A stretch of 56,205 nucleotides of DNA, the filler included, from Dugesia japonica (lineage: Eukaryota): NCBI GenBank assembly GCA_001938525.1. It is 5 parts of 5 records of this genome, joined end to end, with 100 filler letters (N's around TTAATTAATTAA, not from the genome) between each part and the next. Parts side by side here need not be neighbours in the genome. Positions count along the whole stretch, not along the records: positions 21,681 to 35,670 come from MQRL01487508.1; 4 more parts are not named here. One strand, 5' to 3'. Made by a program: the position numbers and the translations under genes. The notes beneath the pieces are model-generated. The model had not been told where the DNA came from, ran no database searches, and saw nothing but the letters and a program-made list of their open reading frames with translations. Below are positions 21,681 through 35,670 of this stretch, piece after piece (within the stretch, counting starts at the first letter, position 1; every line of letters begins with the position of its first letter).

Positions 21681-21724
21681 ATACTACAGAAAAATGGGTA
21701 CTCCCACATTTAGGAAGAGATAAC

Positions 21725-21850
21725 CTGGCGTTAATTAGGAAGAAATTAAGGAAGTATTACAGGAAGATTAAAGGAAGACTTAATTAAGGAAAATTAAAAG
21801 GAAGATTAAAGAAAGACTTAATTAAGGGAAATAAAAGGGAAAAATTAAGA
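21725..21850 (+). repeat. Short purine-rich tandem repeats in the element leader (LTR/5' UTR)
   Basis: GGAAGATTAAAG.AAGACTTAATTAAGG.AAAT repeated twice, plus degenerate copies. Confidence 0.7.
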
Positions 21851-22204
21851 AAGGTGGTTGTGGGAGCTGTAATTACAAGTGTAGAGCAGCATGATATTAA
21901 AATAAGTTTAAAATCAGGAAGAGGAGTGATTGTCTCTTAAGTAAAGACAATTAGAAGTAAATTTTTATTCTAGAAAGTAAAACTACAAAATAGCACAAAA
22001 GCAAACCGAAGCGGATTAAGAAACCAAAAAGCCGGACTCTGACAAAACAGATTGCGACTCGGAAAATAAAAAACCACTTACAAGGTCTAACACATCCGGA
22101 TTATCTACCCCAAATTCAATTCTCAAAGAAACCCAACTTACCCGACCCAGGTCATCAAGGAAGCAAAAGAAATCGTCACTCTATTTGGACCAGGAAGAGA
22201 ACAT

Positions 22205-23700
22205 TTGTTCGCTCAAGAAAAAGAATTCGACAAATCAGCCTCCTTATCCAAAACTAAAACTTTAGAAACCATCAGTTCAAACAGTAGTCCGAATGACAAA
22301 GAAAACCAAACTAACCTAAAAACAATATCCAGTAAAACCCCAGAAGTTAGTAACAGATCAAGTGGAATAAGTTATACATCAGAGGAATCAGAAATCATCG
22401 AACTAATAACTAGTAATCAAGAAAACACCGACTCACTGATAATAAAACCAAGAGACTTAGGAAACGAAACACCCTCAACAATAAATAAAAACCCAAAAAT
22501 AGAATTCAATCTCAAAAAAGACAAAAACATGACCACTAAAACTGAAAACCAACGACCGGAGTGGAAAATAAAATTCGATAGCGAATATTTAAGTGGAATA
22601 CCAGAAAAGTTGGATGAATTTATCCAAAATTACGAAATGTATGCCAAAACCTGTGGCTGGGACGAGGAAGCGAAAAGAAAGCGGTTACCAGTTTACTTAA
22701 CGAGAGTAGCCCAAACCGTGTTTTAGGATCACACCAAGGGCATGGAAGCCATCCCCGAAAAATGGGAAGATATAATAAAGATATTGACGGACAACTTCCA
22801 AAATTTAAAACTGACTGGTCAGGATTTCGAGCAATTTACCAACCGGAAACAACAGCGAGGGGAAACCCCACAAGCTTATATGATGGAACTCAAGAGTCGA
22901 GGCAAACTGGCCTTAGGAGATAAACTAGAAGACATTCAAGTGTTAGCTATATTCTTAAATGAATTACGCGACGAGAACGCAAAGCTAATGGTAAAGTGGA
23001 GTAAGCCAGTGACTCAACAGGACGCCTTGGTCACGTTGCGAATTGTAGCAGATAGACCATCCGAACGAATATTCAAAGTAGAAGGACAGACAGAGGAAAC
23101 TACACCGCGGATATCGGATTTCATACCAAACACACAATCTATGATGAAAACCCTGACCCCAGGGCAGGAACGGAACAGCAGAAATGATAGATCTAACTAC
23201 CCCCGAGGAAATGGCGGAGGATTTAATGCACCTCGTCACAATTGGCAAAATAACCGGAATATACAATGTAATTCCTGTGGAAGGAGGGGACATATAGCCC
23301 GAGATTGTAGGAGTAGAGGCAATAATAATAAAAACAATTGATTTTGTACTTACTGCAAGAAAACCAACCACAATGTAGAAACATGTTTTCTGAAAATCCC
23401 CACTGTCTGTTATAAGTGTAACAGAAGAGGTCATCTGGCAAAAGAATGTCCAAACGGAAACCAAAAAAATTATATCCGAAATCCGAATACAAATCTGGAT
23501 AATCTAATGCAGGAAAATGAGAGATTAAGGCAACGAGTAAACCAAAACANNGGACAAGTCAACTTAGTGCAGCAGAATACTTTTGACGACGTGTACCACA
23601 AAGTCCAACAAGAAAATGATTAGCTCAAGTGGCAAAACCAAGATTTGCAGGTGCAGCAGGATAGACTAGGAAAAAGAAACTGGCTAAACGAACCACACAA
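22205..23700 (+). pseudogene. gag: Gag: capsid domain, three CCHC zinc knuckles and a coiled coil; has stops and a frameshift
   Basis: LDEFIQNYEMYAKTCGWDEE..LPVYL, W..I...L...F, RKQQRGETPQAYMMELK, FLNEL; knuckles CNSCGRRGHIARDC, CTYCKKTNHNVETC, CYKCNRRGHLAKEC. Confidence 0.93.
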
Positions 23701-23974
23701 GAATCAATGTAATATGGTCAGAACACATAGACTTATTTATAATTACCGAAATGGAGGACACTCGGAAATGAATACTGATTACGTCACCAGAATTCGAGTG
23801 GACCAATGAAATCATCCATAAAACAACAAAAACATCAATGACAACCGCCGGAAGAAGACGAGTGATGAATCAGTTACTCCGGTTATATCAGCACCCACAA
23901 GTACATGGAAACGTCAAAGCAAACTGGCAGAAAATAATATCAGATTACATCACTGAGCTCTATAAAGAAACTAA

Positions 23975-26900
23975 GTTAGATGATTACAAATTCGAAATTG
24001 AATATGTATGACATAATAACCCGAAGGTAATTCCGAAACGATTAAAGCTATCACTAAAGGGATTGACAGTACGACACTTGAAAGAAGCCATTAACGAAAT
24101 AAAATGGGCGAATTAGACGGTATCAAATGTATAACGGTAAACCCGTTTCTTGATTTACCACCGTTTACCGATCAACATCAGTGGAATGGAAAGTGGAACA
24201 GGCATAGATTGCAAATAGGTAATATAGGAATCAACATTCTTCCCGATGATAAAAATCTAATTTACTACGGGGCACGACCCCATGAAACAACAGTAATAAA
24301 ATTGATAAATCGTGGTTTGGTATTCAGACCACAGATAGTAATTCAAGAAATAGAAACTGATGAGTTATATCATAATCTCGAAGAAAAATTTTTTAAAGAA
24401 ATCGTTCCCACCACGGCTCAAAACTACTTACGAAAACGATTCGAGAAGGTGAGAGTGATGAACTATCCGGACATGAGACAAAATGAAGCATCACGATTAT
24501 CGCTAGCCCAAATTGATGAGATACTAATAGCCTCCAAGAAACTCCATTATACAATTAGGAGGGAAGTATACCTACAGTTGACTAATCGATTGGTAGAGTT
24601 ATTGGAAGTTATAAAATTGGTCACCGATTTTGAAAGTGATTAGACAGAATGGTTACCAGTACATTATGATTGGGTAATAGCCAACATGGGATTATCAGAT
24701 TACCAAGTATTGTTGTATAACCCAGAAGGAAATAAGAAACTGACACTCGCAGGATTAATGGTGGAAGATCTAGAATTAGCACTGAATCGAGCAGGCCATC
24801 CAAATATAACAGATAAGTTCGTATGTACTTCAAGTGCTATAGTAAATTTTAACGCCAGAAAAAGCCATTTGTACGACTTTGGGGTAAATCGAAATCGTAA
24901 TATTGGATAAACACCCTGGTATCGACTACGACGTATGGGTAACGAAAACTGGAAGATCGGCACTGAAAATCATGGGGAAATGGAATACCTATATAAACAA
25001 GAAGTAGAACCTATCAAAACAAAGATACTTTCCACGGTACTGGGAAAGAAGGACAAACTGACAAAGGAGGAAAGGAAGCAGTTATTGATGACGCGTAACG
25101 ATTTCCTCAAACAAGGATTCGAGAGAAAAGAGGGTAAATGCAAAATGATAAGGATGCGGCAAATGCCGTTAAGGGAAGTAGTAGTGATGCGTAAAGTGGA
25201 GGAAATGATTAACAAAGTACAGGTAGAGAAGGAAATGTTACCCCGAGAAACATATTGATGATATATAACGGGTTGGAAATACCGAAAGAAATTGAGGATC
25301 AATGGCTCATGATTAAACAGTAGTATGCCGAAGAAATATTGGCAACGACCAAAATTCAGGACTATAAACTATATTTGAATATAGTTTAAAATGAACAAGA
25401 AATGACTAAGTACAGCCACCTAAGGCCACAAAGAATAACCATAATGGATCTGGCGGATGCCATTACCGATTAGTGGCAAGAGTACGGATTAAACATGGTA
25501 CCTCTATTCATAAACAGCAAATTGGTCGCGACGGATGACGAGGACAAACACATTCCAATGCCATGCAAAACCCAGAGAAATATGCGAATTAGATGTAGAG
25601 GAGGAGCCGCAGATAGCCCAGTCACCAGAACTTGAGGATCGAATGGAAGAAATAACGGAATTATACGTGTCCGAGGTTCTGACGGGTATTAAGTAACAAG
25701 TAAAAGAAAACCAGAAAAAACAGAATATTGATAACCTACCAATAATTACCACAAAATCAGTTGAATTTCCGGAAGGGACGCCGACAATACGTGATATTCG
25801 GATGAACTACACGAAACCTATAACGGAGGAATCCGCCACGTTTCACGCTATCAAGATCTACTAAGAGTAACACGAGAAACTCGACCAGTAGTGAATATCA
25901 ACGTATATTGGAAAATGATGAATAACCTACGAGATTTGGCAATCTATGGACAACTCAGTTTGTGGGCCAGAGCACAATGGTGGAAAGAGAAAAACCTATA
26001 TGAAGAGGAAGTACAAAATACATCCGCTATATCTGACTATTCTGTCAGAGTGAGATACCTCAGCAAAGAATGAAGTATGAAGAAAGTAGATATGATAACC
26101 CTAGAAGGATTAACTATCCGCCATATCAGAAAACCAATCAAGAAATGGTTATGGCCAAAATCAATCAAGTCATATAAAATGCAGGCGGGAGCAACAATGA
26201 TCATACTAGCCAAAAAAGAAGATCACATCTTCCTGTACGATATTAAACCAGGAGAAATCACGGAAATTAAATTATCCCCGCGGAAAATGACAATAGACTT
26301 TCCGATACCAAAAATGCCGGATACAGATCAGCTTATATTCAACATGATGAGTCTTTATATACAGGAAATATTACCAGTGAAAAACGAAGTGAAAAAAACA
26401 CGTTTGGAGAAAATAAAGTGCAAGTAAACATGGTTAGGAATAATAATTTCAAAACCACGGTCATGGTATCAGACGAGGATGAGGAGGAGGAAGAAATCGT
26501 TGAAGACACAGTCAAACCAAGACTATTACCATTTAAACAAGAATTCGTTACCCCTTTTAGTTCCCCTCAAGCAAAACGTATATCAAAGATAATCTCTGAT
26601 TTCTGGTATTTTCTGGAAAGAATACCTAGGGCACCATTTTGAAAGGCATTAAATTTGTTGATGGATTTGTCGAAATATACCAAAATAGCAAAAGAAGAGC
26701 GCGACAAATGAGAATTAGTGCTCAAGCCGTATATTGGTGCAGTTAAGACAAGGGAGAGGATTTCCAGGTCACTATAGAATATCAGACACCGAGTAAAAAA
26801 CCCAGAAAGGAACCGAAATTGGCTCTAATGCATATACCACATTTCAATAGTACATTAGCTTTGGAATTACAGTAAATTATAGAATCACTGGATATAGCTG

Positions 26901-28285
26901 ACCAACATAAAGGCTATATAATCACCAGCGACCATTTGAGATTCCCTATAAAGCTCGAAGGGAAACAACATTTAATGGACATAGGATTAATACCAGGTAA
27001 AAATATCTTTCTCCAAATACAGAAACCGGAAGACTACGCCCCAGGCCCAGTAAAGTACATGGGAGATGTGCTACAACAATTAGAGGATTTGCACGAGCAA
27101 GAAATCAACAGTGGTAAACTGTTTGAAGAAGTCGACGATAGAACAATGGAGATAAATATCGAGTTATGTGAAGACAGTAAAACATGGAGGAGTCTGGCCC
27201 GGGTAATAATGATAATACTACTGACCCTTGAAAAGAATTTAGAATTATTAAGGGATGACACAGTCATACAACTAATCATGAAATTAAATCAGCTACGAGC
27301 CATTAGCCGTATGCTAGGAGACGTAATGAATGCAATATTATATAAAGTAGTTCGAATGATAACTAATGAAGAAGTCGCCTTAATAATCAGATTTCCGGAT
27401 GAAAGTGGAATTCATTGGCAGATCCAAATGAATGATCAATGGTCCAAATTCCGAAAAAGGATTATAAGATTTATGAATAAACAATGTAATCTTTACGAGG
27501 AGGGGACCGGAACACAACCATTATGACAGGAATACGATATAGTACTCTATTACAATCAGGTAATAGAACCAGACCAAATGAGGTTGCCGGTGAAATATAT
27601 GGGAGTTTGGCCAGGTACTAAATTAAAAATCTACGTAACGGCAAAGGAGGAGGAGAGACGGCGACCACGGGTCTCGGAGGAAAAGTGGAAGCAGGAAGCC
27701 AGAGAAGTAGTGGAATGTTATATAGAAGAGATCCATCTATTAGTACTCGCAAGAGCCAAGCTTCCTAAACAAGAACAAAGTAAACAACGAGTGAAGATGG
27801 TAGCAGCTCTGACCAACACACTAATCAAAAATGAGAATCCAGAAGACAATTTACCAAAATTATTCGAATTGCTAGTGGGTGATAAGTTAATAAAGCCACA
27901 GATCATACGTCGATCCAATATAGTCCTACAACACGATCTGGCAGTAGATCTAAGAAAGCTACGACGATTAATTATGGCCGTCAAGGTATCTCATGTATGG
28001 GTTCCGATTCAGCTTAATAAAACTTTGGTTAAATGGCGGAAAGCGGAGATGGGACAAACGACTCCATTAGCAATCAAATTCAGAATAATCAATCCGGAAG
28101 GAGATAGAATTACGGTTAAGATACCAGTATATAATACGGTAAAGCATCTACGAGATAAATTGCCATTTAAGCCACCATATAAACTCTTGGACGAAAATGG
28201 GGTAGTGGACGAAACCACTTCAATTGGGCTAATGAAGATAGATTTAATCAAATCCAATACTTTATGGATTTTCCCAGAATTATGA
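23975..28285 (+). pseudogene. Accessory region with about 7 divergent ubiquitin-like (beta-grasp) repeats separated by helical spacers
   Basis: Recurrent xDYxhxhxY...hxLxGLThRHh...I...DxxLxxYxhxPxxxhxh pattern, e.g. LPDDKNLIYYGARPHETTVIKL, KEDHIFLYDIKPGEITEIKL, LEGKQHLMDIGLIPGKNIFLQ, LPVKYMGVWPGTKLKIYV. Confidence 0.6.
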
Positions 28286-28848
28286 GGTACCCTTACTCGG
28301 AAAGAAGCAGACCCTTATAAAGCAGCAGATAAAACAAGACCAATAATGGGAGAAACCTTAGGGATGTTAAAAGCATATAAACACCGTACACAACTAGTGG
28401 CTAGACAAATATTAAGACTTACAACAGACCAGTCAGGAAGTACAGAAACCTCCCGAGAAACGAAAGGAACCCCTAAAACAACTCAAGATTGGGAACGTGA
28501 AATATTCGGATCCCCATCAGCAGATGAATTAGCAGAAGATGGGAATGAATTGCAAATCACAAGACATTCACCTCCAACGAGAAAAAGTGGAGAACTACAA
28601 GCATATAGCCAACACGAAGCAAAAAATATGATCCTAGCAAGGTAGATTTAGACGAGGAAGATGCATTAGAAGAACAAACATTATAACCAATATTGAGTAG
28701 GATGGCAAAAGAATTGCCATCATTAGTAATGGATGACTTAATGGATACAAACCACCCTTTAGAAATGGAAAATCCTATGGAGACAGAAGAGGAAGAAGTA
28801 CCACCGAAACCAGTGCACACCAGAGTGGATGCAGAAACGATTACTGAA

Positions 28849-28878
28849 CCTAAAAAAAGAGGAAGGCCAAGAACGAAA
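28849..28878 (+). other. AT-hook/NLS motif in a disordered acidic linker
   Basis: PKKRGRPRTK. Confidence 0.7.
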
Positions 28879-29013
28879 CCTCCAGGAAACCTGGAGGAAG
28901 AGGAAGCATTAAAACAAAAGAGACGAGCAACATCAGTAAATCAACAGACGAAGCGAGAATCCAGGAGATGATGACAGACTCATACTGAAGTGGTAATACG
29001 GCAATTATAGCTA

Positions 29014-29388
29014 ATGCTTTATCCAGAGCTAAAGATTTGGATTGGTAAATTTCAACTATCAGATAGTCTCAGACCACTAGCAAAAGAAATAGAAGCAGCC
29101 ATTAAGAAATTTCACGCTACTAAAGGTACTAGTCATGGCACGAGAGACAACTTGGAAGGAGTAATGGATGATTTTTTACAGGATCAGTCAACGAAAGGAA
29201 GAATAGTAGTATCTATAGCCCATTTGATTAATCAAGCACATCTATCAATGGCCAGAAGCAAGCCGTCAAAAAACTTCATTCTAAAGCAGAACAAAATAGT
29301 GCCGTTGATAAAGCATCATGGGGGATGGAAAAAGTTTATTGAGGTCATATGCCATAAGCCTCAACCATCTCATGAAAATGCAACTTGA
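29014..29388 (+). CDS. Bcl-2-family-like domain (part of the decayed polyprotein)
   Basis: BH3-like LSDSLRPLAKEIE, BH1-like LEGVMDDFLQDQSTKGRIVVSIAH, BH2-like LIKHHGGWKKFIE, with family-like spacing. Confidence 0.72.
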   Translation: MLYPELKIWIGKFQLSDSLRPLAKEIEAAIKKFHATKGTSHGTRDNLEGVMDDFLQDQSTKGRIVVSIAHLINQAHLSMARSKPSKNFILKQNKIVPLIKHHGGWKKFIEVICHKPQPSHENAT

Positions 29389-29466
29389 GTAATCAGGATT
29401 GTAAGAGATCAGTTAAATGAGATTGAGAATGGATGGACACGTGGGCCTCGCCGAAATTCATGGTAG

Positions 29467-31480
29467 GCATTAACAACTACAATACTCTTATTATTCTTAT
29501 TGATGGGCAGAAGTGAAGCCATATTAGCATATGGCTGCGATATGATGCAAGTTGGGAAGGAAGTATTCTCATTAGTAGATACTGAAGAATGTCCGTACGC
29601 GAACCCAGAAAAAATTTCACTCCGAAATAATTCCGTGTACCACCTGTATCAGGAGTCGGATTATTATAAGGCCCAAGTACGCGAATGTATAGTAACAATA
29701 AAGACGTTCATATTCCATTGTGGTTACCACAGTTACACCTCAATAATTGATCCAGGAATGGTAAAACCTCGTACATTTAACGGGACAACAATGTGACGAA
29801 GGATTCACTACAGGTAAAATTACCATCAAACATGGGACTCAAGTTGTCGCCAAAAGGGACATGTAATCGACCAACCAATAGAAGCAGCAGGAAGCATATC
29901 CTAACATATAGACAACTGTGAATATGGTACCTACACTATACGAAGAAAAGTACGGCAGTATGCGGTGGCAATCGAAACTTATACAGTGGAGCTCAAGGAA
30001 TACGAAGCATTCTTTGATGCACAAGATCTGAAAATGAAAGGAAGATCGTATTGTAAAGCAGCGGACGGATCATGTAATACAGGTACATCAACTCTAACAT
30101 ACAAAATAGACCACGAGGACTGCAAGCTAGCTCATCTAAAAGAGGCACTGTCCAATGAATACCAAGGACAGTGGGCTATAGCACCTATTGACCAATCTCC
30201 AAAAAAAGGTAATCTAAAGGATAGAGGAAACGATAAGATAAGGCCCAAAATCATACGATTATCAATGGCACGCAACTCCCACGATGCTAATGTCCTCAGA
30301 ACAGGATGAGACCATCCGCCTAATTAAACGAAATTCTATGTCAAAATGTGGACAAATAGTGTATAAAACAAACTATAAAGGAATATTCGTATCAGAACAT
30401 CGAATGAAAACCCCACAGGCCGCAGTAATGTCACAAGATATCAAATTACATCTATATGCCAATAATAAAATGGACAACTTATTCCACCGGATGCAAAATA
30501 ACATCGGACGAATGTACCACGATCTCATACAAAATGAGTGCAGGTTAAATAAGAAAATACTGAAGACAAAGTTAGCAATGGCGGTTACGAATCCAGATAG
30601 TGTCACCCCACTAATTCCCTTGAAAAAAGGACAATTTGGTCTAGTACTAGGAGAAGTAATGTACCTATATTACTGTAAGGCCGTAGATGCAGAGTTTTCG
30701 TCCAATTCAAAACATTGCTATAATGAAATAGAAATTATCCATAACAATGAAAAACGTTATGTACAACCAATTACTCGAATAATATCACCACTGGGTTATA
30801 GGCCGAATATCATAAACTGCTCCAATGTATTTGGACCACAATACGTAATGACAGACGTGCCATGGATAGGATTTCCACAACGTATGGCAGTTGGAGTTGA
30901 GCCAAGAAAATTCTCAAAGTTATGATTTAATGGCGGTATGCAGTTTTCTCCGATTGATGTAAATAAAGGCGGAATTTACAGCAGGGAAGATCTAGAGAAA
31001 TCTAGGGAATATATGCTGTTTCCAGTCTGAAGAATGCAAATTCTATCAAATATAGTACAATTAACCTGTGGAACAAACATAGACGGGCGCGTAAATTATG
31101 ATGCATTATTGTCACCCGATCATTTCCAGAAAGCCACGGAAAACGTCATGCGGAAAATGTGGGGCTGATTTATACTATTTGGTCAGGCAATGGCAGGATT
31201 GCTGGGAGTGATTTTGATAATTTCAGGAGCACGAGTAGTGATTACCCAATTGTTTGCATGTTTCGACATATACAAAAGAGAAAAGAAAGTGAATTAGAAA
31301 ATGCTAACCGGAATATTCCCATTCTTAGCCAAAACCATGGTGCTTAATAGCCACTCAAAAGAGATTGACAGGGTAAAACGATATATCCGTAAGCTCGGGC
31401 AAAAAAGAGGATCGGACAAGAAGGTTATAATGCAACTTCGATTGTTGTGTGAAGAAGAAAATATTGTATTTTAGCCAACT
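29467..31480 (+). pseudogene. env: Envelope glycoprotein, chuvirus G-like (class III fusogen type), with frameshifts and stops
   Basis: Signal ALTTTILLLFLLMGRSEA, then ILAYGC..FSL..EEC, LYQESDY..VRECIVTIKTFIFHCGYHSY, LYANNKMD, MYHDLIQNECRL, GEVMYLYYCKAV, CYNEI, YVQPITRII, GGIYS; C-terminal TM near 31160-31270. Confidence 0.85.
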
Positions 31481-31974
31481 CAAAAACAAAGGTTTAAGTA
31501 CAAAAGTGAAAGTAGCAGCAGCAGCGATGATGATAGAAAAGAGAGCAGTGGAACGCCACATTTACCCAGTTATAAAACCGCCATGGAATACGATGCGAAG
31601 TTTAAAAGACAACAATATGAAAGAATCAGTAAAATGCAACGACTAAGAAATGCATAAAAATTCGTAGGAAATGAAATTACACCAGCACCAGCACAAATGT
31701 ACTACAACGCCTATCCACAACATGGTTGGCAACCCATGAATCAACAGCCACAACAGGTATGGGCACCAGGTCTCATGTACAACACTCCTTATATGAGTCC
31801 ATCACAAGCTCCTAATATGGCATTATTAACAAAAAATAATCTAACCACCATTGACAGAAGAACTACGGACCAAAATTTGCGTTCTCCGAATAACCAGATC
31901 ACTGAAAACGATAAATTAGAAACCCAAATCGTATGTATGATGATTTATCAGAAAGCGAAACTACTACAAAAAAG

Positions 31975-32215
31975 GATAAAAATTGACAGAAGATTGGTAA
32001 TAGCAATTATCGATACGGCAGCAAGTACGACTTTAGTTCACAAAAGAATATTAGAAGATTATCGACAATTCCGAATAATCATTACTAAAGGAGTTATCAT
32101 CACGGCTTCTGAAGAAAAGATATCACCTGTCGGGGAAGTAATATGTGCAATAGAAAGTGACGGAATCCGTCTATGGCATAAAGTGCCTACTGGGATTAGA
32201 TCTCTTACCACGTCT
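31975..32215 (+). pseudogene. Aspartic protease domain 1 (DTA variant)
   Basis: IKIDRRLVIAIIDTAASTTLV..IITASEEKISPVGEV..CLLGLDLL (last motif after a frameshift). Confidence 0.8.
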
Positions 32216-32559
32216 ATGCTCAGAGGGAATACTAGATCTGAGGAAACTAACAATACGAGAAATTCACGATCAGGAATACACACCACAAGGTTACTAAAAG
32301 ACCAGGATAATAATTGCACGGAAACGACCAACAAAATGGAATCAAACAACCCCTAACCAACGGCCTCAACTCTCGTCATGCAGGGGTGAACAATATAATT
32401 CGAATCAAGGTCGTCGAAAAACCACCAATACCTCCATTATGATAAGAGACTATTGAATACGGTTTCAGGAACGGGAACCAAGGTGGAAAGAGAAAAAACC
32501 ACAGAATACAAATTATAACCCTTTGGATATGGTGTACGCAGGTCTCGGCGGTGGATCTG

Positions 32560-32840
32560 TGTTAACAATTATAGTTAAAATCAACGGTAGACCTACAACT
32601 GCTTTATTGGATACAGGAGCAACAATCTCGTTGCTATCAATAGAAGAAATCCCGATAACAGAATATAAAACATACTACTCACCAATACCACAGCAGATGT
32701 GGCAAACCGGAGTAGACTTAAAATTTTTGGAGAACTAACATGTGAAGTAGAATATTTGGATAACAAAATTAAGCACAACATGATAATAGTAGAGATGGCT
32801 GGACAGTGCATTTTGGCACGGACATTCTCCCAATTCTGAT
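32560..32840 (+). pseudogene. Aspartic protease domain 2 (canonical DTG)
   Basis: VKINGRPTTALLDTGATISLL..VANRSRLKIFGEL..CI(L)GTDIL with frameshifts. Confidence 0.88.
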
Positions 32841-32939
32841 GAAAAATGGCATATTGAACTTCTCAACGTTACGGTTACAATCTCTGGAGGGATATACTCA
32901 CGTTAAAGATCACGAAGTATTTACAACAGAGGAAATATT

Positions 32940-33800
32940 GGTATGTGTACAGCTACAATGCATACCATTCCGTTAACAGACGAAACCCCGGTTAAACAAA
33001 AACAATATGCAATGACTGTGGAAAAGAAGGAATTTGCAAATAAGGAAACAGCTAATTTAGTGAAAATCGGTGTAATAGAACCCAGCTGCTTGCCATGGCA
33101 GTCCCCAGTGGTATTAGTGGATAAGAAAGATGGGACACAACGATTCTGCATTGATTACCGAAGATTAAATGCACAAACTAAGAAGGACATATATACGTTA
33201 CCAGACATCAATGAATTGCTACAATCATTGTGTAATGCCAAAATATTCACTACATTGGACCTGCGAAGTGGGTATTGGCAGGTACAGATTAAACCAGAAG
33301 ATAGGGAGAAAACAGCTTTTTCTACAGGCAAAGATTTATATCAGTTCATCCGCATGCCATTTGGACTCACTAATGCACCTGCCTCATTCCAGAGGATGAT
33401 GAATTATGTAACACATGGTATCTCGCAATGTATGGCATACATTGACGACTTGCTGATATATTCACTAACGTTTGAAGGACATCTCAATGATTTACATAGT
33501 GTGTTCATTCGATTACGAAAATGGAATTTGAAAGTGTAACTTACCAAATGTGAAGAATAAAGTAACGTATTTTGGTCACTTAATATCCGATAAAGGAAAG
33601 GAGCCAGATCCGAGAAACACCGAGAAAATCAGAAATCTAGCACCTCCTAATTGTGTGCTCAAAATACAAAGGTTTTTAGCCTCGCAAATTACAACCGCAA
33701 ATTTATCAAATACTTCGCAAAGATTGCAAAACATATACAAGAATTGGTCAAACAGGATACCGCATGTATATGGGGACCGGAGCAACAACAAGCATTTGAA
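32940..33800 (+). pseudogene. pol: Reverse transcriptase, Ty3/Gypsy type
   Basis: HTIPL, PWQSPVVLVDKKDGTQRFCIDYRRLN, LDLRSGYWQ, KTAF, RMPFGLTNAPASFQRMM, YIDD. Confidence 0.97.
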
Positions 33801-33819
33801 ACGTTGCGGGACAAATTAT

Positions 33820-34230
33820 TAACTGCACCAATTCTGGTGCATCCAGATTACAAAAAGCCATTTATATTAGCCACTGACGCTAGTGGATATGCGATGGGTG
33901 CTGTATTAAGTCAACTGAATGAACAAGGTAGAGAAAGGGTAATAGTATATTTTAGCATATTTTAGCAAGAAAAAGAGCAGAGTTAAATTACAGCACTACA
34001 GAGCGAGAAATAATGGCTATTATTAAAGCCACTAAACATTTTCGATCACTCATACATGGTCACAAAGGTGTTAATCTATACGGATCACTTACCAATCACT
34101 TTTATGGCTCAGAAACCATTACGATGGAATAGAATGGCAAAATGGCAATTAGCAATGCAGGATTATTGCCCTCTATTAAATTTTAAAACGGGTAAAGCCA
34201 ACATAAATGCCGATTGTCTGTCGAGAATCG
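33820..34230 (+). pseudogene. pol: RNase H
   Basis: APILVHPD..PFILATDASGYAMGAVLSQ, NYSTTEREIMAI, IYTDHLPI, GKANINADCLSR. Confidence 0.95.
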
Positions 34231-34529
34231 GTGGACCAGAAGCTACAGAAAGTACCCCGGAAGATACGGAAACGTTTACAATACGTGAATTATTAGAGAA
34301 AAAAGTGGGGATGGTATACTTCATTTCAGCCGAGGATCAAAATTTTGATGGGCTGAAACAAGCATAGGCTGACGATGAGAAAATCAAGATCATCCCGAAA
34401 TATATTGAAAGTTACAATTTAGAGAAGTTAGACTGCGAAGCCAAAATGAAAGAGCACGTAAAGAAAAACGGCGGTAGTTATGCATTTATCAAAGGATGGT
34501 TGACTGCTCAGGACGGAGAAAATACTGTA

Positions 34530-35610
34530 TTAGTCATTCTTAAAGCAAGACGGGACAAATTACTCGAACAATATCACAATGGAGTACTAGGAGGACACAT
34601 GTCCCATAAGAAAACCGAGTCAAATTTAAGACAGAAATACTACTGACCATACATGACGGAATCAGTAAAGGAATGGATCGCTAAATGTCTGGTATGTGCT
34701 GCCAGAAGAGGAACAGGCAAACGAGTAAAAGCATTATTAAAACCAATTGCCGTCCCCGCAGCACCTATGGAAATAATCGCCATGGACGTAGTTGGACCGC
34801 TATCACCAACGCTGAGCGGGAATATATATATATATATACTAACAATCATGGATTACTTGTCAAAATTTCCAGAGGCATTCACTATGAAAAATCAAAAGGC
34901 AACCACAATAGCAGATATTCTAGTACGAAAATTTTTCAGCAGATATGGCACACTCATGAAAGTATTGAGCTATCAAGGAAAAAACTTTATGAGCAACATA
35001 CTGGCACAGATATCAAGCTTTCTCTGGATACATCAATTATGGACATCGCCTTATCATCCTCAAACAGACGGACTAACGGAACGATTTAATAAAACATTGA
35101 TCAATATGCTGTCTAGTTATGCACAGAAAGAACAGAATAATTGGGANNNNNNNNNNCAGCTATGTCTATTTGCATATCGAATAAATGTGCACCCAGCTAC
35201 AAAATACACTCCATTCGGTCTTATGTATGGCAGAAAGTGTAACATGCCAATTGATTTAGAGTTTTAGCCACCCATAACTCAATACCAAGACGAAACGGAT
35301 TTCGCTGAAAATTTGAAAGAAACTAAGCAGAAAATATGGAAACAGGCCAAGGAGAATGTAGGATTTTACCTAGAAAGCTATAAGGATTTGCACGATAAAA
35401 CTGCAATGCAACATTCATTTGAAAATGAAGACATGGTATTGATCAATTTTTTGACACTCATAGATATTTGTGTTGGCACTAGTTTGAAATAAAAAAGGCC
35501 ATGACAAAGGCCCTACGAAGTAATTGAGGTAACCGAAACCAATCTCAAAGTTCGGAAAAAAGGAAATCTCTTAGTGAAACCTAAAATATACCACACCAAC
35601 TTATGTAAAA
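34530..35610 (+). pseudogene. pol: Integrase (HHCC, DDE core with second D mutated to Y, GPY module)
   Basis: YHNGVLGGH..CLVC, MDVVGPL, DYLSKF, SYQGKNF, PYHPQTDGLTERFN, GPYEVIEV. Confidence 0.96.
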
Positions 35611-35670
35611 AGGCCGCAATGACGGAGGAAATTACGCCAACCACAAGTGCTGCACCAACTGTGACGGAAC

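What the first reader, a model, noticed from the sequence alone, without database searches (positions are those of the whole stretch)
21681..35670. Giant virus-like Gypsy element: gag - Ubl array - AT-hook - Bcl-2 - env - 2x protease - RT-RH-IN
Seen: one contiguous contig with Gypsy gag and pol separated by about 8 kb of same-strand coding DNA of the same base composition. Established: ordinary Ty3/Gypsy elements are gag-pol, and errantiviruses carry a baculovirus-F-type env after pol. Inference: this is an enveloped endogenous retrovirus-like lineage with host-manipulating cargo (apoptosis, ubiquitin). As I recall, giant planarian Gypsy elements (Burro) were reported with an anti-apoptotic protein, so part of this may be known. 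I do not recognise the full combination with a chuvirus-type env and a Ubl array as described.
Basis: partly seen in the sequence, partly recalled or inferred. Interest (0 to 1): 0.93.

Follow-up and report, generated by a model that had tools for sequence, protein, structure and literature searches.

The report
Decayed Burro-like giant Gypsy retroelement
This is a dead, stop-riddled copy of a giant retrovirus-like Gypsy element that carries an envelope gene, a Bcl-2-like module and about 5 kb of unknown coding cargo between gag and pol; that layout was already published for the planarian 'Burro' elements, so the find is real but not new in kind.

Summary
The observation largely holds. On the + strand the piece encodes, in order:
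- gag with three CCHC zinc knuckles
- about 5.4 kb of former coding DNA with no detectable relatives
- one AT-hook-like motif
- a Bcl-2-like module
- a Monjiviricetes/chuvirus-type fusion glycoprotein
- two retropepsin-like domains
- RT, RNase H and integrase

The 10-N gap lies inside integrase. Its flanks are in frame and correctly spaced against an intact relative.

The 'Ubl array' could not be confirmed.

The copy is dead: about 44-57 in-frame stops and 7-12 frame changes, spread evenly over all parts.

Intact relatives from metagenome contigs encode gag-env-PR(x2-3)-RT-RH-IN as one ORF. Env between gag and pol is therefore native to the lineage, not a nested insertion.

The orphan middle has the same codon usage, strand bias and break density as the core genes.

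Arkhipova & Yushenova 2019 (PMC6431247) already describe the Burro/GYPSM1 elements of planarians. Their layout is gag(2-3 knuckles)-...-Ubi2/SUMO-like-BCL2-env(mononegavirus-like, in frame)-PR-RT-RH-IN, and they note decaying copies in Dugesia japonica.

Verdict: a new, decayed member of a known kind. The host was not identified. No LTRs lie in the piece.

The parts
21681..22204 (+). 5' untranslated leader. It is A-rich and holds a purine-rich tandem repeat at 21733-21853 (38-nt unit, 2.9 copies). At most about 45 nt of a possible LTR end lie before a TGG at 21726. No LTR can be defined in the piece.
   Evidence: Sequence read. TRF. No long direct repeat pair in the piece.
22205..23623 (+). 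gag (broken gene): a capsid-like region followed by three CCHC zinc knuckles. It has 3 in-frame stops and 0 frame changes on the best-frame path. It contains the NN at 23550-23551.
   Evidence: zf-CCHC. Translation. tblastn to the gag part of P0004 and P0023. Break counts.
23624..29013 (+). Orphan cargo region (broken coding DNA, about 1,800 codons). No relatives were found. It has 18-26 in-frame stops and 4-7 frame changes on the best-frame path.
   Evidence: Open-frame cover 0.83 against 0.19 in shuffles. Codon usage r=0.905 with the core genes. Break density 4.7-5.6 per kb, like env and pol. No hits.
23859..24457 (+). Cargo repeat module, copy A
   Evidence: BLASTP against copy B: 27% identity over 93 aa, E 1e-7. 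A colinear weak match lies upstream.
25912..26421 (+). Cargo repeat module, copy B
28843..28884 (+). AT-hook-like motif: an RGRP core flanked by K/R.
   Evidence: Translation. Shuffle test: a motif this basic appears in 0.7% of shuffles. No Pfam AT_hook hit.
29014..29385 (+). Bcl-2-like all-helical module directly upstream of env.
   Evidence: Pfam Bcl-2 at E 0.07 here, and 0.2 and 9.6e-4 in the homologous modules of P0002 and P0006. Homology to those modules. A profile of the three against PDB: all 60 listed hits are Bcl-xL or Bcl-2, best E 1e-3. The AF2 model has six helices but pLDDT 51. Foldseek was non-significant.
29480..31500 (+). env (broken gene): a Monjiviricetes/chuvirus-type fusion glycoprotein. 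A signal-like hydrophobic stretch sits at its start and a TM-like stretch near its end. It has 9 in-frame stops and 1 frame change.
   Evidence: PF24664. It is colinear with the env of P0002, P0003, P0158 and others. Hydrophobic stretches. Break counts.
31844..32182 (+). PR1: first retropepsin-like domain (D-T-A motif).
   Evidence: phmmer to PR-like repeats of P0153 and P0007. Translation. No Pfam hit of its own.
32556..32940 (+). PR2: second retropepsin-like domain (D-T-G motif). The PR1+PR2 region has 4 stops and 2 frame changes, or 11 stops and 0 frame changes under a stricter model.
   Evidence: RVP E 1.8e-7.. Weak PR1/PR2 self-match. Counts.
32943..34367 (+). RT-RNase H (broken gene). 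The YIDD motif is still readable. It has 8 in-frame stops and 0 frame changes.
   Evidence: RVT_1, RT_RNaseH_2 and RT_RNaseH. A single about 900-aa colinear HSP to P0003, P0153, P0155 and P0158 at 40-44% identity. Counts.
34446..35670 (+). Integrase (broken gene): H2C2 zinc domain, core, and the start of a C-terminal tail. It has 4 in-frame stops and 0 frame changes. The piece's edge cuts it off.
   Evidence: Integrase_H2C2 and rve.. Homology to relatives runs to the end of the piece.
35147..35156 (.). Assembly gap (10 N) inside the integrase core. The flanks are in frame and correctly spaced.

Best explanation
The piece is the internal part of one decayed copy of a Burro-like giant Ty3/Gypsy (Metaviridae-type) endogenous retrovirus-like element. 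It runs from the leader to integrase and holds no LTRs.

Inferred from intact relatives: the ancestor was read as one very long polyprotein, in the order gag - cargo - Bcl-2-like - env - PR - PR - RT - RH - IN.

Shown: the env is a fusion glycoprotein of the kind used by Monjiviricetes (chuvirus/mononegavirus-like RNA viruses). It sits between gag and pol as a native part of the lineage.

Inferred:
- The tandem retropepsin domains cut the polyprotein.
- Hydrophobic stretches that bracket env insert it into the membrane.
- The Bcl-2-like module and the rest of the cargo acted on the host cell.

Shown: this copy cannot make any of these proteins. It carries about 44-57 in-frame stops and 7-12 frame changes, spread evenly.
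For: - Domain order.
- Intact relatives with gag-env-PR(x2-3)-RT-RH-IN in a single ORF: P0011, P0023, P0014, P0004. Relatives with env-PR-RT-RH-IN: P0003, P0005, P0015, P0153, P0155, P0158.
- The window is colinear with them.
- The Bcl-2-like module is conserved directly upstream of env in P0002 and P0006. It is Bcl-2 family by profile search.
- The middle region behaves as coding DNA of the same age as the rest. Open-frame cover is 0.83 against 0.19 in shuffles. Codon usage correlates at r=0.905. Break density is 4.7-5.6 per kb, against 3.1-5.5 in env and pol.
- All three stop codons occur (TAA 11, TAG 7, TGA 8), so the stops are decay and not a variant genetic code.
- Hydrophobic stretches bracket env in relatives and in the window.
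- The published Burro architecture matches, including three knuckles, BCL2 next to env, and env in frame between gag and pol (PMC6431247).
Against: - No Burro reference sequence could be compared, so relatedness to Burro1-4/GYPSM1 rests on architecture alone.
- The published Burro domains MATH_TRAF_C, BIR, ankyrin, Smc and dUTPase-like were not detected here.
- The 5.4-kb middle has no homologue in any relative found.
- The host is unknown.
- The closest env relative is only 48% identical.
- LTRs, PBS and TSD are not in the piece.
Confidence: 0.8

Rival explanations
1. The 23.6-29.0 kb stretch is foreign to the element. It would be a nested insertion of something else, or an assembly chimera joined near the NN at 23550-23551.
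For: - No relative carries anything similar.
- Two protein searches were blank.
- An unflagged NN lies exactly at the gag/cargo border.
Against: - It lies on the same strand, and the reading frame stays open across the NN.
- Codon usage correlates at r=0.905 with gag, env and pol, against 0.54-0.58 when frame-shifted.
- Break density is the same as in the core genes. A later insertion should be younger.
- No transposase, RT or other mobile-element domain was found, and no flanking repeats.
- Long unannotated stretches upstream of env occur in relatives too: P0014 has about 700 aa and P0022 at least 1,345 aa.
- Burro carries still more cargo there.
Confidence: 0.08
2. It belongs to a wider, mostly undescribed clade of single-ORF gag-env-pol Gypsy elements seen in metagenomes, and is not a Burro in the strict sense. 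The Burro-like cargo position would then be parallel gain in a different host.
For:
- None of the Burro-specific Pfam domains (MATH, BIR, Smc, dUTPase) was found.
- The window has two PR domains instead of PR plus dUTPase-like.
- The cargo is an orphan.
Against: - It shares with published Burro three zinc knuckles, a Bcl-2-like module abutting env, and env between gag and pol.
- P0155, one member of the same env cluster, carries ankyrin repeats as Burro does.
Confidence: 0.1
3. The env is an independent endogenous chuvirus-like fragment that landed inside a Gypsy copy. It would not be a gene of the element.
For: Chuvirus-type glycoprotein EVEs are common and are often found alone (PMC7642597).
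Against: At least ten intact relatives have env fused in one ORF with PR-RT-RH-IN, and four of these also with gag. The window's env is closest to these fused forms (29-48% identity), not to free-standing proteins of about 650 aa (24-30% identity).
Confidence: 0.02

Closest known systems
Burro1-4 / GYPSM1 giant Gypsy elements of dugesiid planarians (Jurka 2007; Grohme et al. 2018; Arkhipova & Yushenova 2019, PMC6431247)
   Same: - Ty3/Gypsy-type PR-RT-RH-IN.
- gag with CCHC knuckles: three here, and three in S. mediterranea.
- A BCL2-like module directly before env.
- An env related to mononegavirus-type fusion glycoproteins, lying between gag and pol.
- Kilobases of extra coding cargo.
- Tandem repeats in non-coding parts.
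- Decaying copies with stops and frameshifts are reported in Dugesia japonica.
   Different: - No MATH_TRAF_C, BIR, ankyrin, Smc or dUTPase-like match here.
- A second retropepsin-like domain is present.
- One AT-hook-like motif is present.
- The cargo is an orphan with an internal duplication.
- Gag to IN spans about 13.5 kb.
- Sequence relatedness to Burro and the host were not tested.
Anakin (Pao-family BEL/Pao elements of mosquitoes with a captured chuvirus glycoprotein; PMC7642597)
   Same: An LTR retroelement that uses a Jingchuvirales/chuvirus-type glycoprotein as its env.
   Different: The backbone there is BEL/Pao, not Gypsy. The paper places the glycoprotein within the element's LTR boundaries and does not report it between gag and pol. 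No Bcl-2-like module or giant cargo is reported.
Errantiviruses (Drosophila gypsy, ZAM and others)
   Same: A Ty3/Gypsy backbone with an envelope gene; an endogenous retrovirus-like life style.
   Different: From general knowledge, errantivirus env is of the baculovirus-F type and is a separate ORF after pol. Here env is PF24664-type and lies before PR.
Cellular and viral Bcl-2 family proteins (Bcl-xL, Bcl-2; herpesvirus and poxvirus homologues)
   Same: The profile of the module matches the BH1-BH2 part of Bcl-xL and Bcl-2 chains. The model is all-helical with six helices.
   Different: It scores below Pfam's cut-off. The model has low confidence. It is embedded in a retroelement polyprotein. 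No function was tested.

Membership tests
Ty3/Gypsy (Metaviridae-type) LTR retroelement | Domain order PR-RT-RNase H-IN with Gypsy-type RH and an H2C2 integrase | tested here: met
   RVP, RVT_1, RT_RNaseH_2/RT_RNaseH, Integrase_H2C2 and rve occur in that order. No BEL/Pao-specific family was hit.
Ty3/Gypsy (Metaviridae-type) LTR retroelement | Long terminal repeats, PBS, PPT, target-site duplication | not testable with these tools
   The piece starts in the leader and ends inside the IN tail. It holds no direct repeat pair.
Ty3/Gypsy (Metaviridae-type) LTR retroelement | RT groups with the Gypsy clade in a tree | not tested
Burro / GYPSM1-like giant Gypsy elements | gag with 2-3 CCHC zinc knuckles at the N-terminus of the polyprotein | tested here: met
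   Three knuckles. The gag region is homologous to that of P0004 and P0023. Retrotrans_gag itself was hit only in relative P0011.
Burro / GYPSM1-like giant Gypsy elements | env homologous to mononegavirus-type fusion glycoproteins, between gag and pol, in the same ORF | tested here: met
   PF24664 lies between gag and PR on the same strand. The single-ORF state is seen in intact relatives. It cannot be read in this broken copy.
Burro / GYPSM1-like giant Gypsy elements | BCL2-like motif upstream of env | tested here: met
   Support is moderate: best E 1e-3, and below the Pfam cut-off.
Burro / GYPSM1-like giant Gypsy elements | Ubi2/SUMO-like motif upstream of BCL2 | tested here: inconclusive
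   Only UCH_UBL1 at E 0.15. AF2 pLDDT 36.8. No PDB hit.
Burro / GYPSM1-like giant Gypsy elements | MATH_TRAF_C, BIR, ankyrin, Smc/AIR1-like and dUTPase-like motifs | tested here: not met
   No such Pfam hit in any open piece. Decay may hide them. These motifs also vary between the published Burro families.
Burro / GYPSM1-like giant Gypsy elements | Sequence relatedness to Burro1-4/GYPSM1, and a dugesiid planarian host | not tested
   No reference sequence was held. Grohme et al. 2018 is not in the library. The host was not identified.
Errantivirus | Baculovirus-F-type env as a separate ORF downstream of pol | tested here: not met
   The env is PF24664-type and lies upstream of PR.
Anakin (Pao + chuvirus glycoprotein) | BEL/Pao backbone | tested here: not met
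   The RH and IN domains are Gypsy-type. No Peptidase_A17 or other Pao families were hit.
Bcl-2 family (the module at 29014-29385) | Match to the Bcl-2 family profile over BH1-BH2 | tested here: inconclusive
   Pfam E 0.07, 0.2 and 9.6e-4 in three homologous modules, all below the 31.4-bit cut-off. The three-sequence profile hits only Bcl-xL and Bcl-2 in PDB, at E 1e-3.
Bcl-2 family (the module at 29014-29385) | Bcl-2 fold: helical bundle around a central hairpin | tested here: inconclusive
   The model has six helices but pLDDT 51. Foldseek best E is 2.6. Roughly 20 of the about 45 listed matches are Bcl-2 family.
Ubiquitin-like (beta-grasp) domains, 'Ubl array' | Profile or fold match to ubiquitin-like domains, in several copies | tested here: not met
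   The only repeat found is a two-copy module of unknown fold.

The most novel reading that the evidence does not exclude
The window represents an undescribed family of Burro-like elements from a host not yet sampled in public protein collections. It has its own orphan cargo of about 1,800 codons, including an internally duplicated module and an AT-hook. The Bcl-2-like-plus-env pair would be ancestral to a broad clade of single-ORF gag-env-pol Gypsy elements. Apart from Burro, that clade is visible so far only as unnamed metagenome contigs.
Probability: 0.35. Interest if true: 0.5.

Novelty: new member of a known kind. Interest (0 to 1): 0.33.

Why it matters
The piece adds one more, dead example to the few known retroelements that carry a negative-strand-RNA-virus glycoprotein and a Bcl-2-like module inside their polyprotein.

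The searches also brought out a more useful by-product. Intact single-ORF gag-env-PRxN-RT-RH-IN polyproteins of up to 4,844 aa exist on unnamed metagenome contigs. Two of the env-bearing relatives, P0002 and P0006, keep the Bcl-2-like module glued to env.

This suggests that the Burro type of organisation is wider and older than the three planarian species in which it was described. The copy itself has no biological activity.

Tried and rejected
- Exact look-up of the longest window ORF: not on record.
- Three word-indexed protein searches: two cargo pieces gave nothing, and the N-terminal region of P0002 found only itself. These blanks say nothing about much longer or shorter kin.
- AlphaFold of the 235-aa cargo piece without an alignment: pLDDT 36.8, unusable.
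- Foldseek of the Bcl-2-like model: nothing significant.
- PDB sequence searches of cargo pieces and of the env piece: nothing.
- An apparent hit of one cargo piece to 'BP39L lectin' (E 2e-5). It is the sum of seven sub-threshold matches to a short repeated motif and was rejected as chance.
- A variant genetic code as the explanation for the many in-frame stops: rejected, because all three stop codons occur.
- Aligning five hand-picked 'Ubl' candidates: incoherent, no conserved column. jackhmmer within the piece gave no robust array.
- Rfam and tRNA scans: nothing.
- LTR search within the piece: nothing.
- Grohme et al. 2018 could not be read.
Full report
**Scope**

Only window 21681-35670 was studied. 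The + strand is A-rich throughout (A 39%, AT skew 0.15-0.39, GC 0.34-0.41).

All recognisable coding lies on the + strand. It is cut into many short open stretches, the longest about 250 codons.

**Assembly gap (tested first)**

The 10-N run at 35147-35156 lies inside the integrase core. With ten N the codon phase is the same on both sides.

The integrase piece, with the N read as X, aligns to intact relative P0003 at 51% identity over 204 residues (E 3e-68). There is no gap at the four X. The two sides are therefore continuous, in frame and correctly spaced. Nothing was filled in.

A second, unflagged NN lies at 23550-23551, just after the third zinc knuckle. The frame stays open across it for two dozen codons.

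**What is there, 5' to 3'**

- **Leader (21681-22204).** It holds a purine-rich 38-nt tandem repeat. The piece contains no LTR pair.
- **gag (22205-23623).**
  - The capsid-like part matches the gag region of relatives P0004 and P0023.
  - Three CCHC knuckles follow.
- **Cargo (23624-29013).** About 5.4 kb with no Pfam, PDB or protein-database relatives.
- **AT-hook-like motif, near the end of the cargo.** One RGRP core in a basic context. A motif this basic appears in 0.7% of shuffles.
- **Bcl-2-like module (29014-29385).**
- **env (about 29480-31500).**
  - It matches PF24664 Monjiviricetes_fusion (E 3e-14 and 2.8e-34).
  - A hydrophobic stretch sits at its start and another near its end.
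- **Two retropepsin-like domains.**
  - PR1 has a D-T-A motif and is homologous to PR-like repeats of P0153 and P0007.
  - PR2 has a D-T-G motif and hits RVP at E 1.8e-7.
- **RT, RNase H and integrase.**
  - RT still shows YIDD.
  - Integrase has the H2C2 domain and the core.
- **3' edge.** Homology to relatives runs to the last base, so the element is cut by the piece's edge.

**Is env between gag and pol native?**

A full HMMER scan with the largest env piece found 672 proteins at E up to 1e-3. The best 23 hits (29-50% identity) are fragments or long polyproteins. Free-standing proteins of about 650 aa follow at 24-30% identity.

Pfam scans of the long hits show two layouts:
- P0011, P0023, P0014 and P0004 encode gag-env-PR(x2-3)-RT-RH-IN in one ORF.
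- P0003, P0005, P0015, P0153, P0155 (4,844 aa) and P0158 (4,099 aa) encode env-PR(s)-RT-RH-IN plus long tails.

The window is colinear with all of them. Env upstream of PR and multiple PR domains are therefore lineage traits, not a nested insertion.

In 12 relatives a hydrophobic stretch lies near the C-end of env in all 12, and at its N-end in 8. This fits membrane insertion of env from within a polyprotein, which remains an inference.

**Bcl-2-like module**

- The window piece is homologous to modules directly upstream of env in P0002 and P0006 (25-27% identity).
- Each of the three gives Pfam Bcl-2 as its only non-retroviral match (E 0.07, 0.2 and 9.6e-4). All three are below the curated cut-off.
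- A profile of the three against all PDB sequences returns only Bcl-xL and Bcl-2 chains among the 60 listed (best E 1e-3). The match covers the BH1-BH2 part.
- The AlphaFold model has six helices but pLDDT 51.
- Foldseek gave nothing significant, although roughly 20 of the about 45 listed matches are Bcl-2 family.

I take the assignment as moderately supported.

**The middle 5.4 kb**

Four measures show that it was coding, belonged to the element, and is as old as the rest.

| Measure | Middle region | Comparison |
|---|---|---|
| Open-frame cover, + strand | 0.83 | env 0.82, pol 0.94; shuffles mean 0.19, max 0.40 |
| In-frame codon usage vs gag+env+pol | r = 0.905 | 0.54-0.58 when frame-shifted |
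| Breaks per kb on the best-frame path | 4.7-5.6 | 3.1-5.5 in env, PR, RT-RH and IN |
| Mobile-element domains or flanking repeats | none | - |

The region contains one old internal duplication. Two modules about 2 kb apart share 27% identity over 93 aa (E 1e-7), with a colinear weak match upstream. Their fold is unknown.

**'Ubl array'**

This was not confirmed.
- There is no ubiquitin-family Pfam hit except a faint UCH_UBL1 at E 0.15.
- There is no PDB hit.
- The single-sequence model failed (pLDDT 36.8).
- The candidate modules do not align.

One Ubl upstream of the Bcl-2-like module remains plausible, because Burro has a Ubi2/SUMO-like motif at that place. It is not shown here.

**State of the copy**

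Counts only, on a best-frame path. Where relatives exist, homology supports them.

| Part | In-frame stops | Frame changes |
|---|---|---|
| gag | 3 | 0 |
| cargo | 18-26 | 4-7 |
| Bcl-2-like | 1 | 0 |
| env | 9 | 1 |
| PR1+PR2 | 4 (or 11) | 2 (or 0) |
| RT-RH | 8 | 0 |
| IN | 4 (plus the N gap) | 0 |
| Whole element | about 44-57 | 7-12 |

- All three stop codons occur among the 26 homology-supported stops (TAA 11, TAG 7, TGA 8). They are decay, not a variant genetic code.
- No large deletion or insertion relative to the relatives was seen in env or pol.

**Comparison with the literature**

Arkhipova & Yushenova 2019 (PMC6431247) describe Burro/GYPSM1 of Schmidtea mediterranea and a Burro-like element of Dugesia tigrina.
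- They report a polyprotein of about 4,900-5,100 aa.
- Gag carries three or two CCHC knuckles.
- Cargo motifs are AIR1, Smc, MATH_TRAF_C, BIR, ankyrin and midasin-like.
- A Ubi2/SUMO-like motif precedes BCL-2.
- The env hits arthropod and fish mononegavirus fusion glycoproteins and lies in frame between gag and pol.
- PR, a dUTPase-like motif, RT, RH and IN follow.
- They add that Dugesia japonica holds decaying Burro fragments with stops and frameshifts.

The following differ here, or were not found:
- none of the MATH, BIR, Ank, Smc or dUTPase matches
- a second PR domain
- an AT-hook-like motif
- an orphan cargo

Chuvirus-type glycoproteins in LTR elements are also known from mosquito Pao elements (Anakin; PMC7642597), on a different backbone.

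**Limits**

- The host was not identified. The relatives are unnamed ENA/JGI/NCBI contigs, and one is mis-binned as a Flavobacteriaceae MAG protein.
- No Burro reference sequence was available, so family membership rests on architecture.
- I did not look up or fetch the DNA contigs of the env-bearing relatives.
Every query was a single open piece given by reference. Scripts that aligned across stops printed only counts and outer bounds.

- I also worked out the codon phase of ORFs that the tool had listed. None of these strings went into a call, a note or the evidence. I stopped once I noticed.
- One script printed the translations and bounds of two open cargo pieces.

**Verdict**

This is a real, single, retrovirus-like element of the Burro type. 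It is long dead, and its architecture is already known. Interest is moderate to low.

Noticed in passing
window 23550-23551: Two N that the scan's program did not flag. They sit exactly at the border between the third zinc knuckle and the cargo. The reading frame stays open across them.
   Followed up: partly
window 21733-21853: Purine-rich tandem repeat (38-nt unit, 2.9 copies, 84% matches) in the leader upstream of gag. The Burro figure legend also mentions tandem repeats.
   Followed up: no
window 22205-35670: Decay is dominated by in-frame stops (about 44-57) over frame changes (7-12), on a strongly A-rich + strand. This could reflect substitution-biased decay or editing. The mutational spectrum was not analysed.
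   Followed up: no
window 23859-24457 and 25912-26421: An old two-copy duplication inside the orphan cargo (27% identity over 93 aa, E 1e-7). The fold is unknown.
   Followed up: partly
relatives P0155, P0014, P0003 (proteins from the env search): Retropepsin-like domains are multiplied in this lineage. Pfam finds 2-4 copies. In P0155, weak phmmer matches, mostly above E 0.01, suggest up to about 8, some downstream of integrase. Relatives also carry tails of 600-1,500 aa after IN, and P0155 carries ankyrin and C2H2 motifs.
   Followed up: partly
relative P0005 (NCBI HBK71150.1): A 2,627-aa env-PR-RT-RH-IN polyprotein is deposited as a hypothetical protein of a Flavobacteriaceae MAG. It most likely comes from a mis-binned eukaryotic retroelement contig.
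   Followed up: no
window 30766-30802 and 34555-34591: A 37-nt direct repeat pair at 78% identity, one copy in env and one in integrase. It is probably chance.
   Followed up: no
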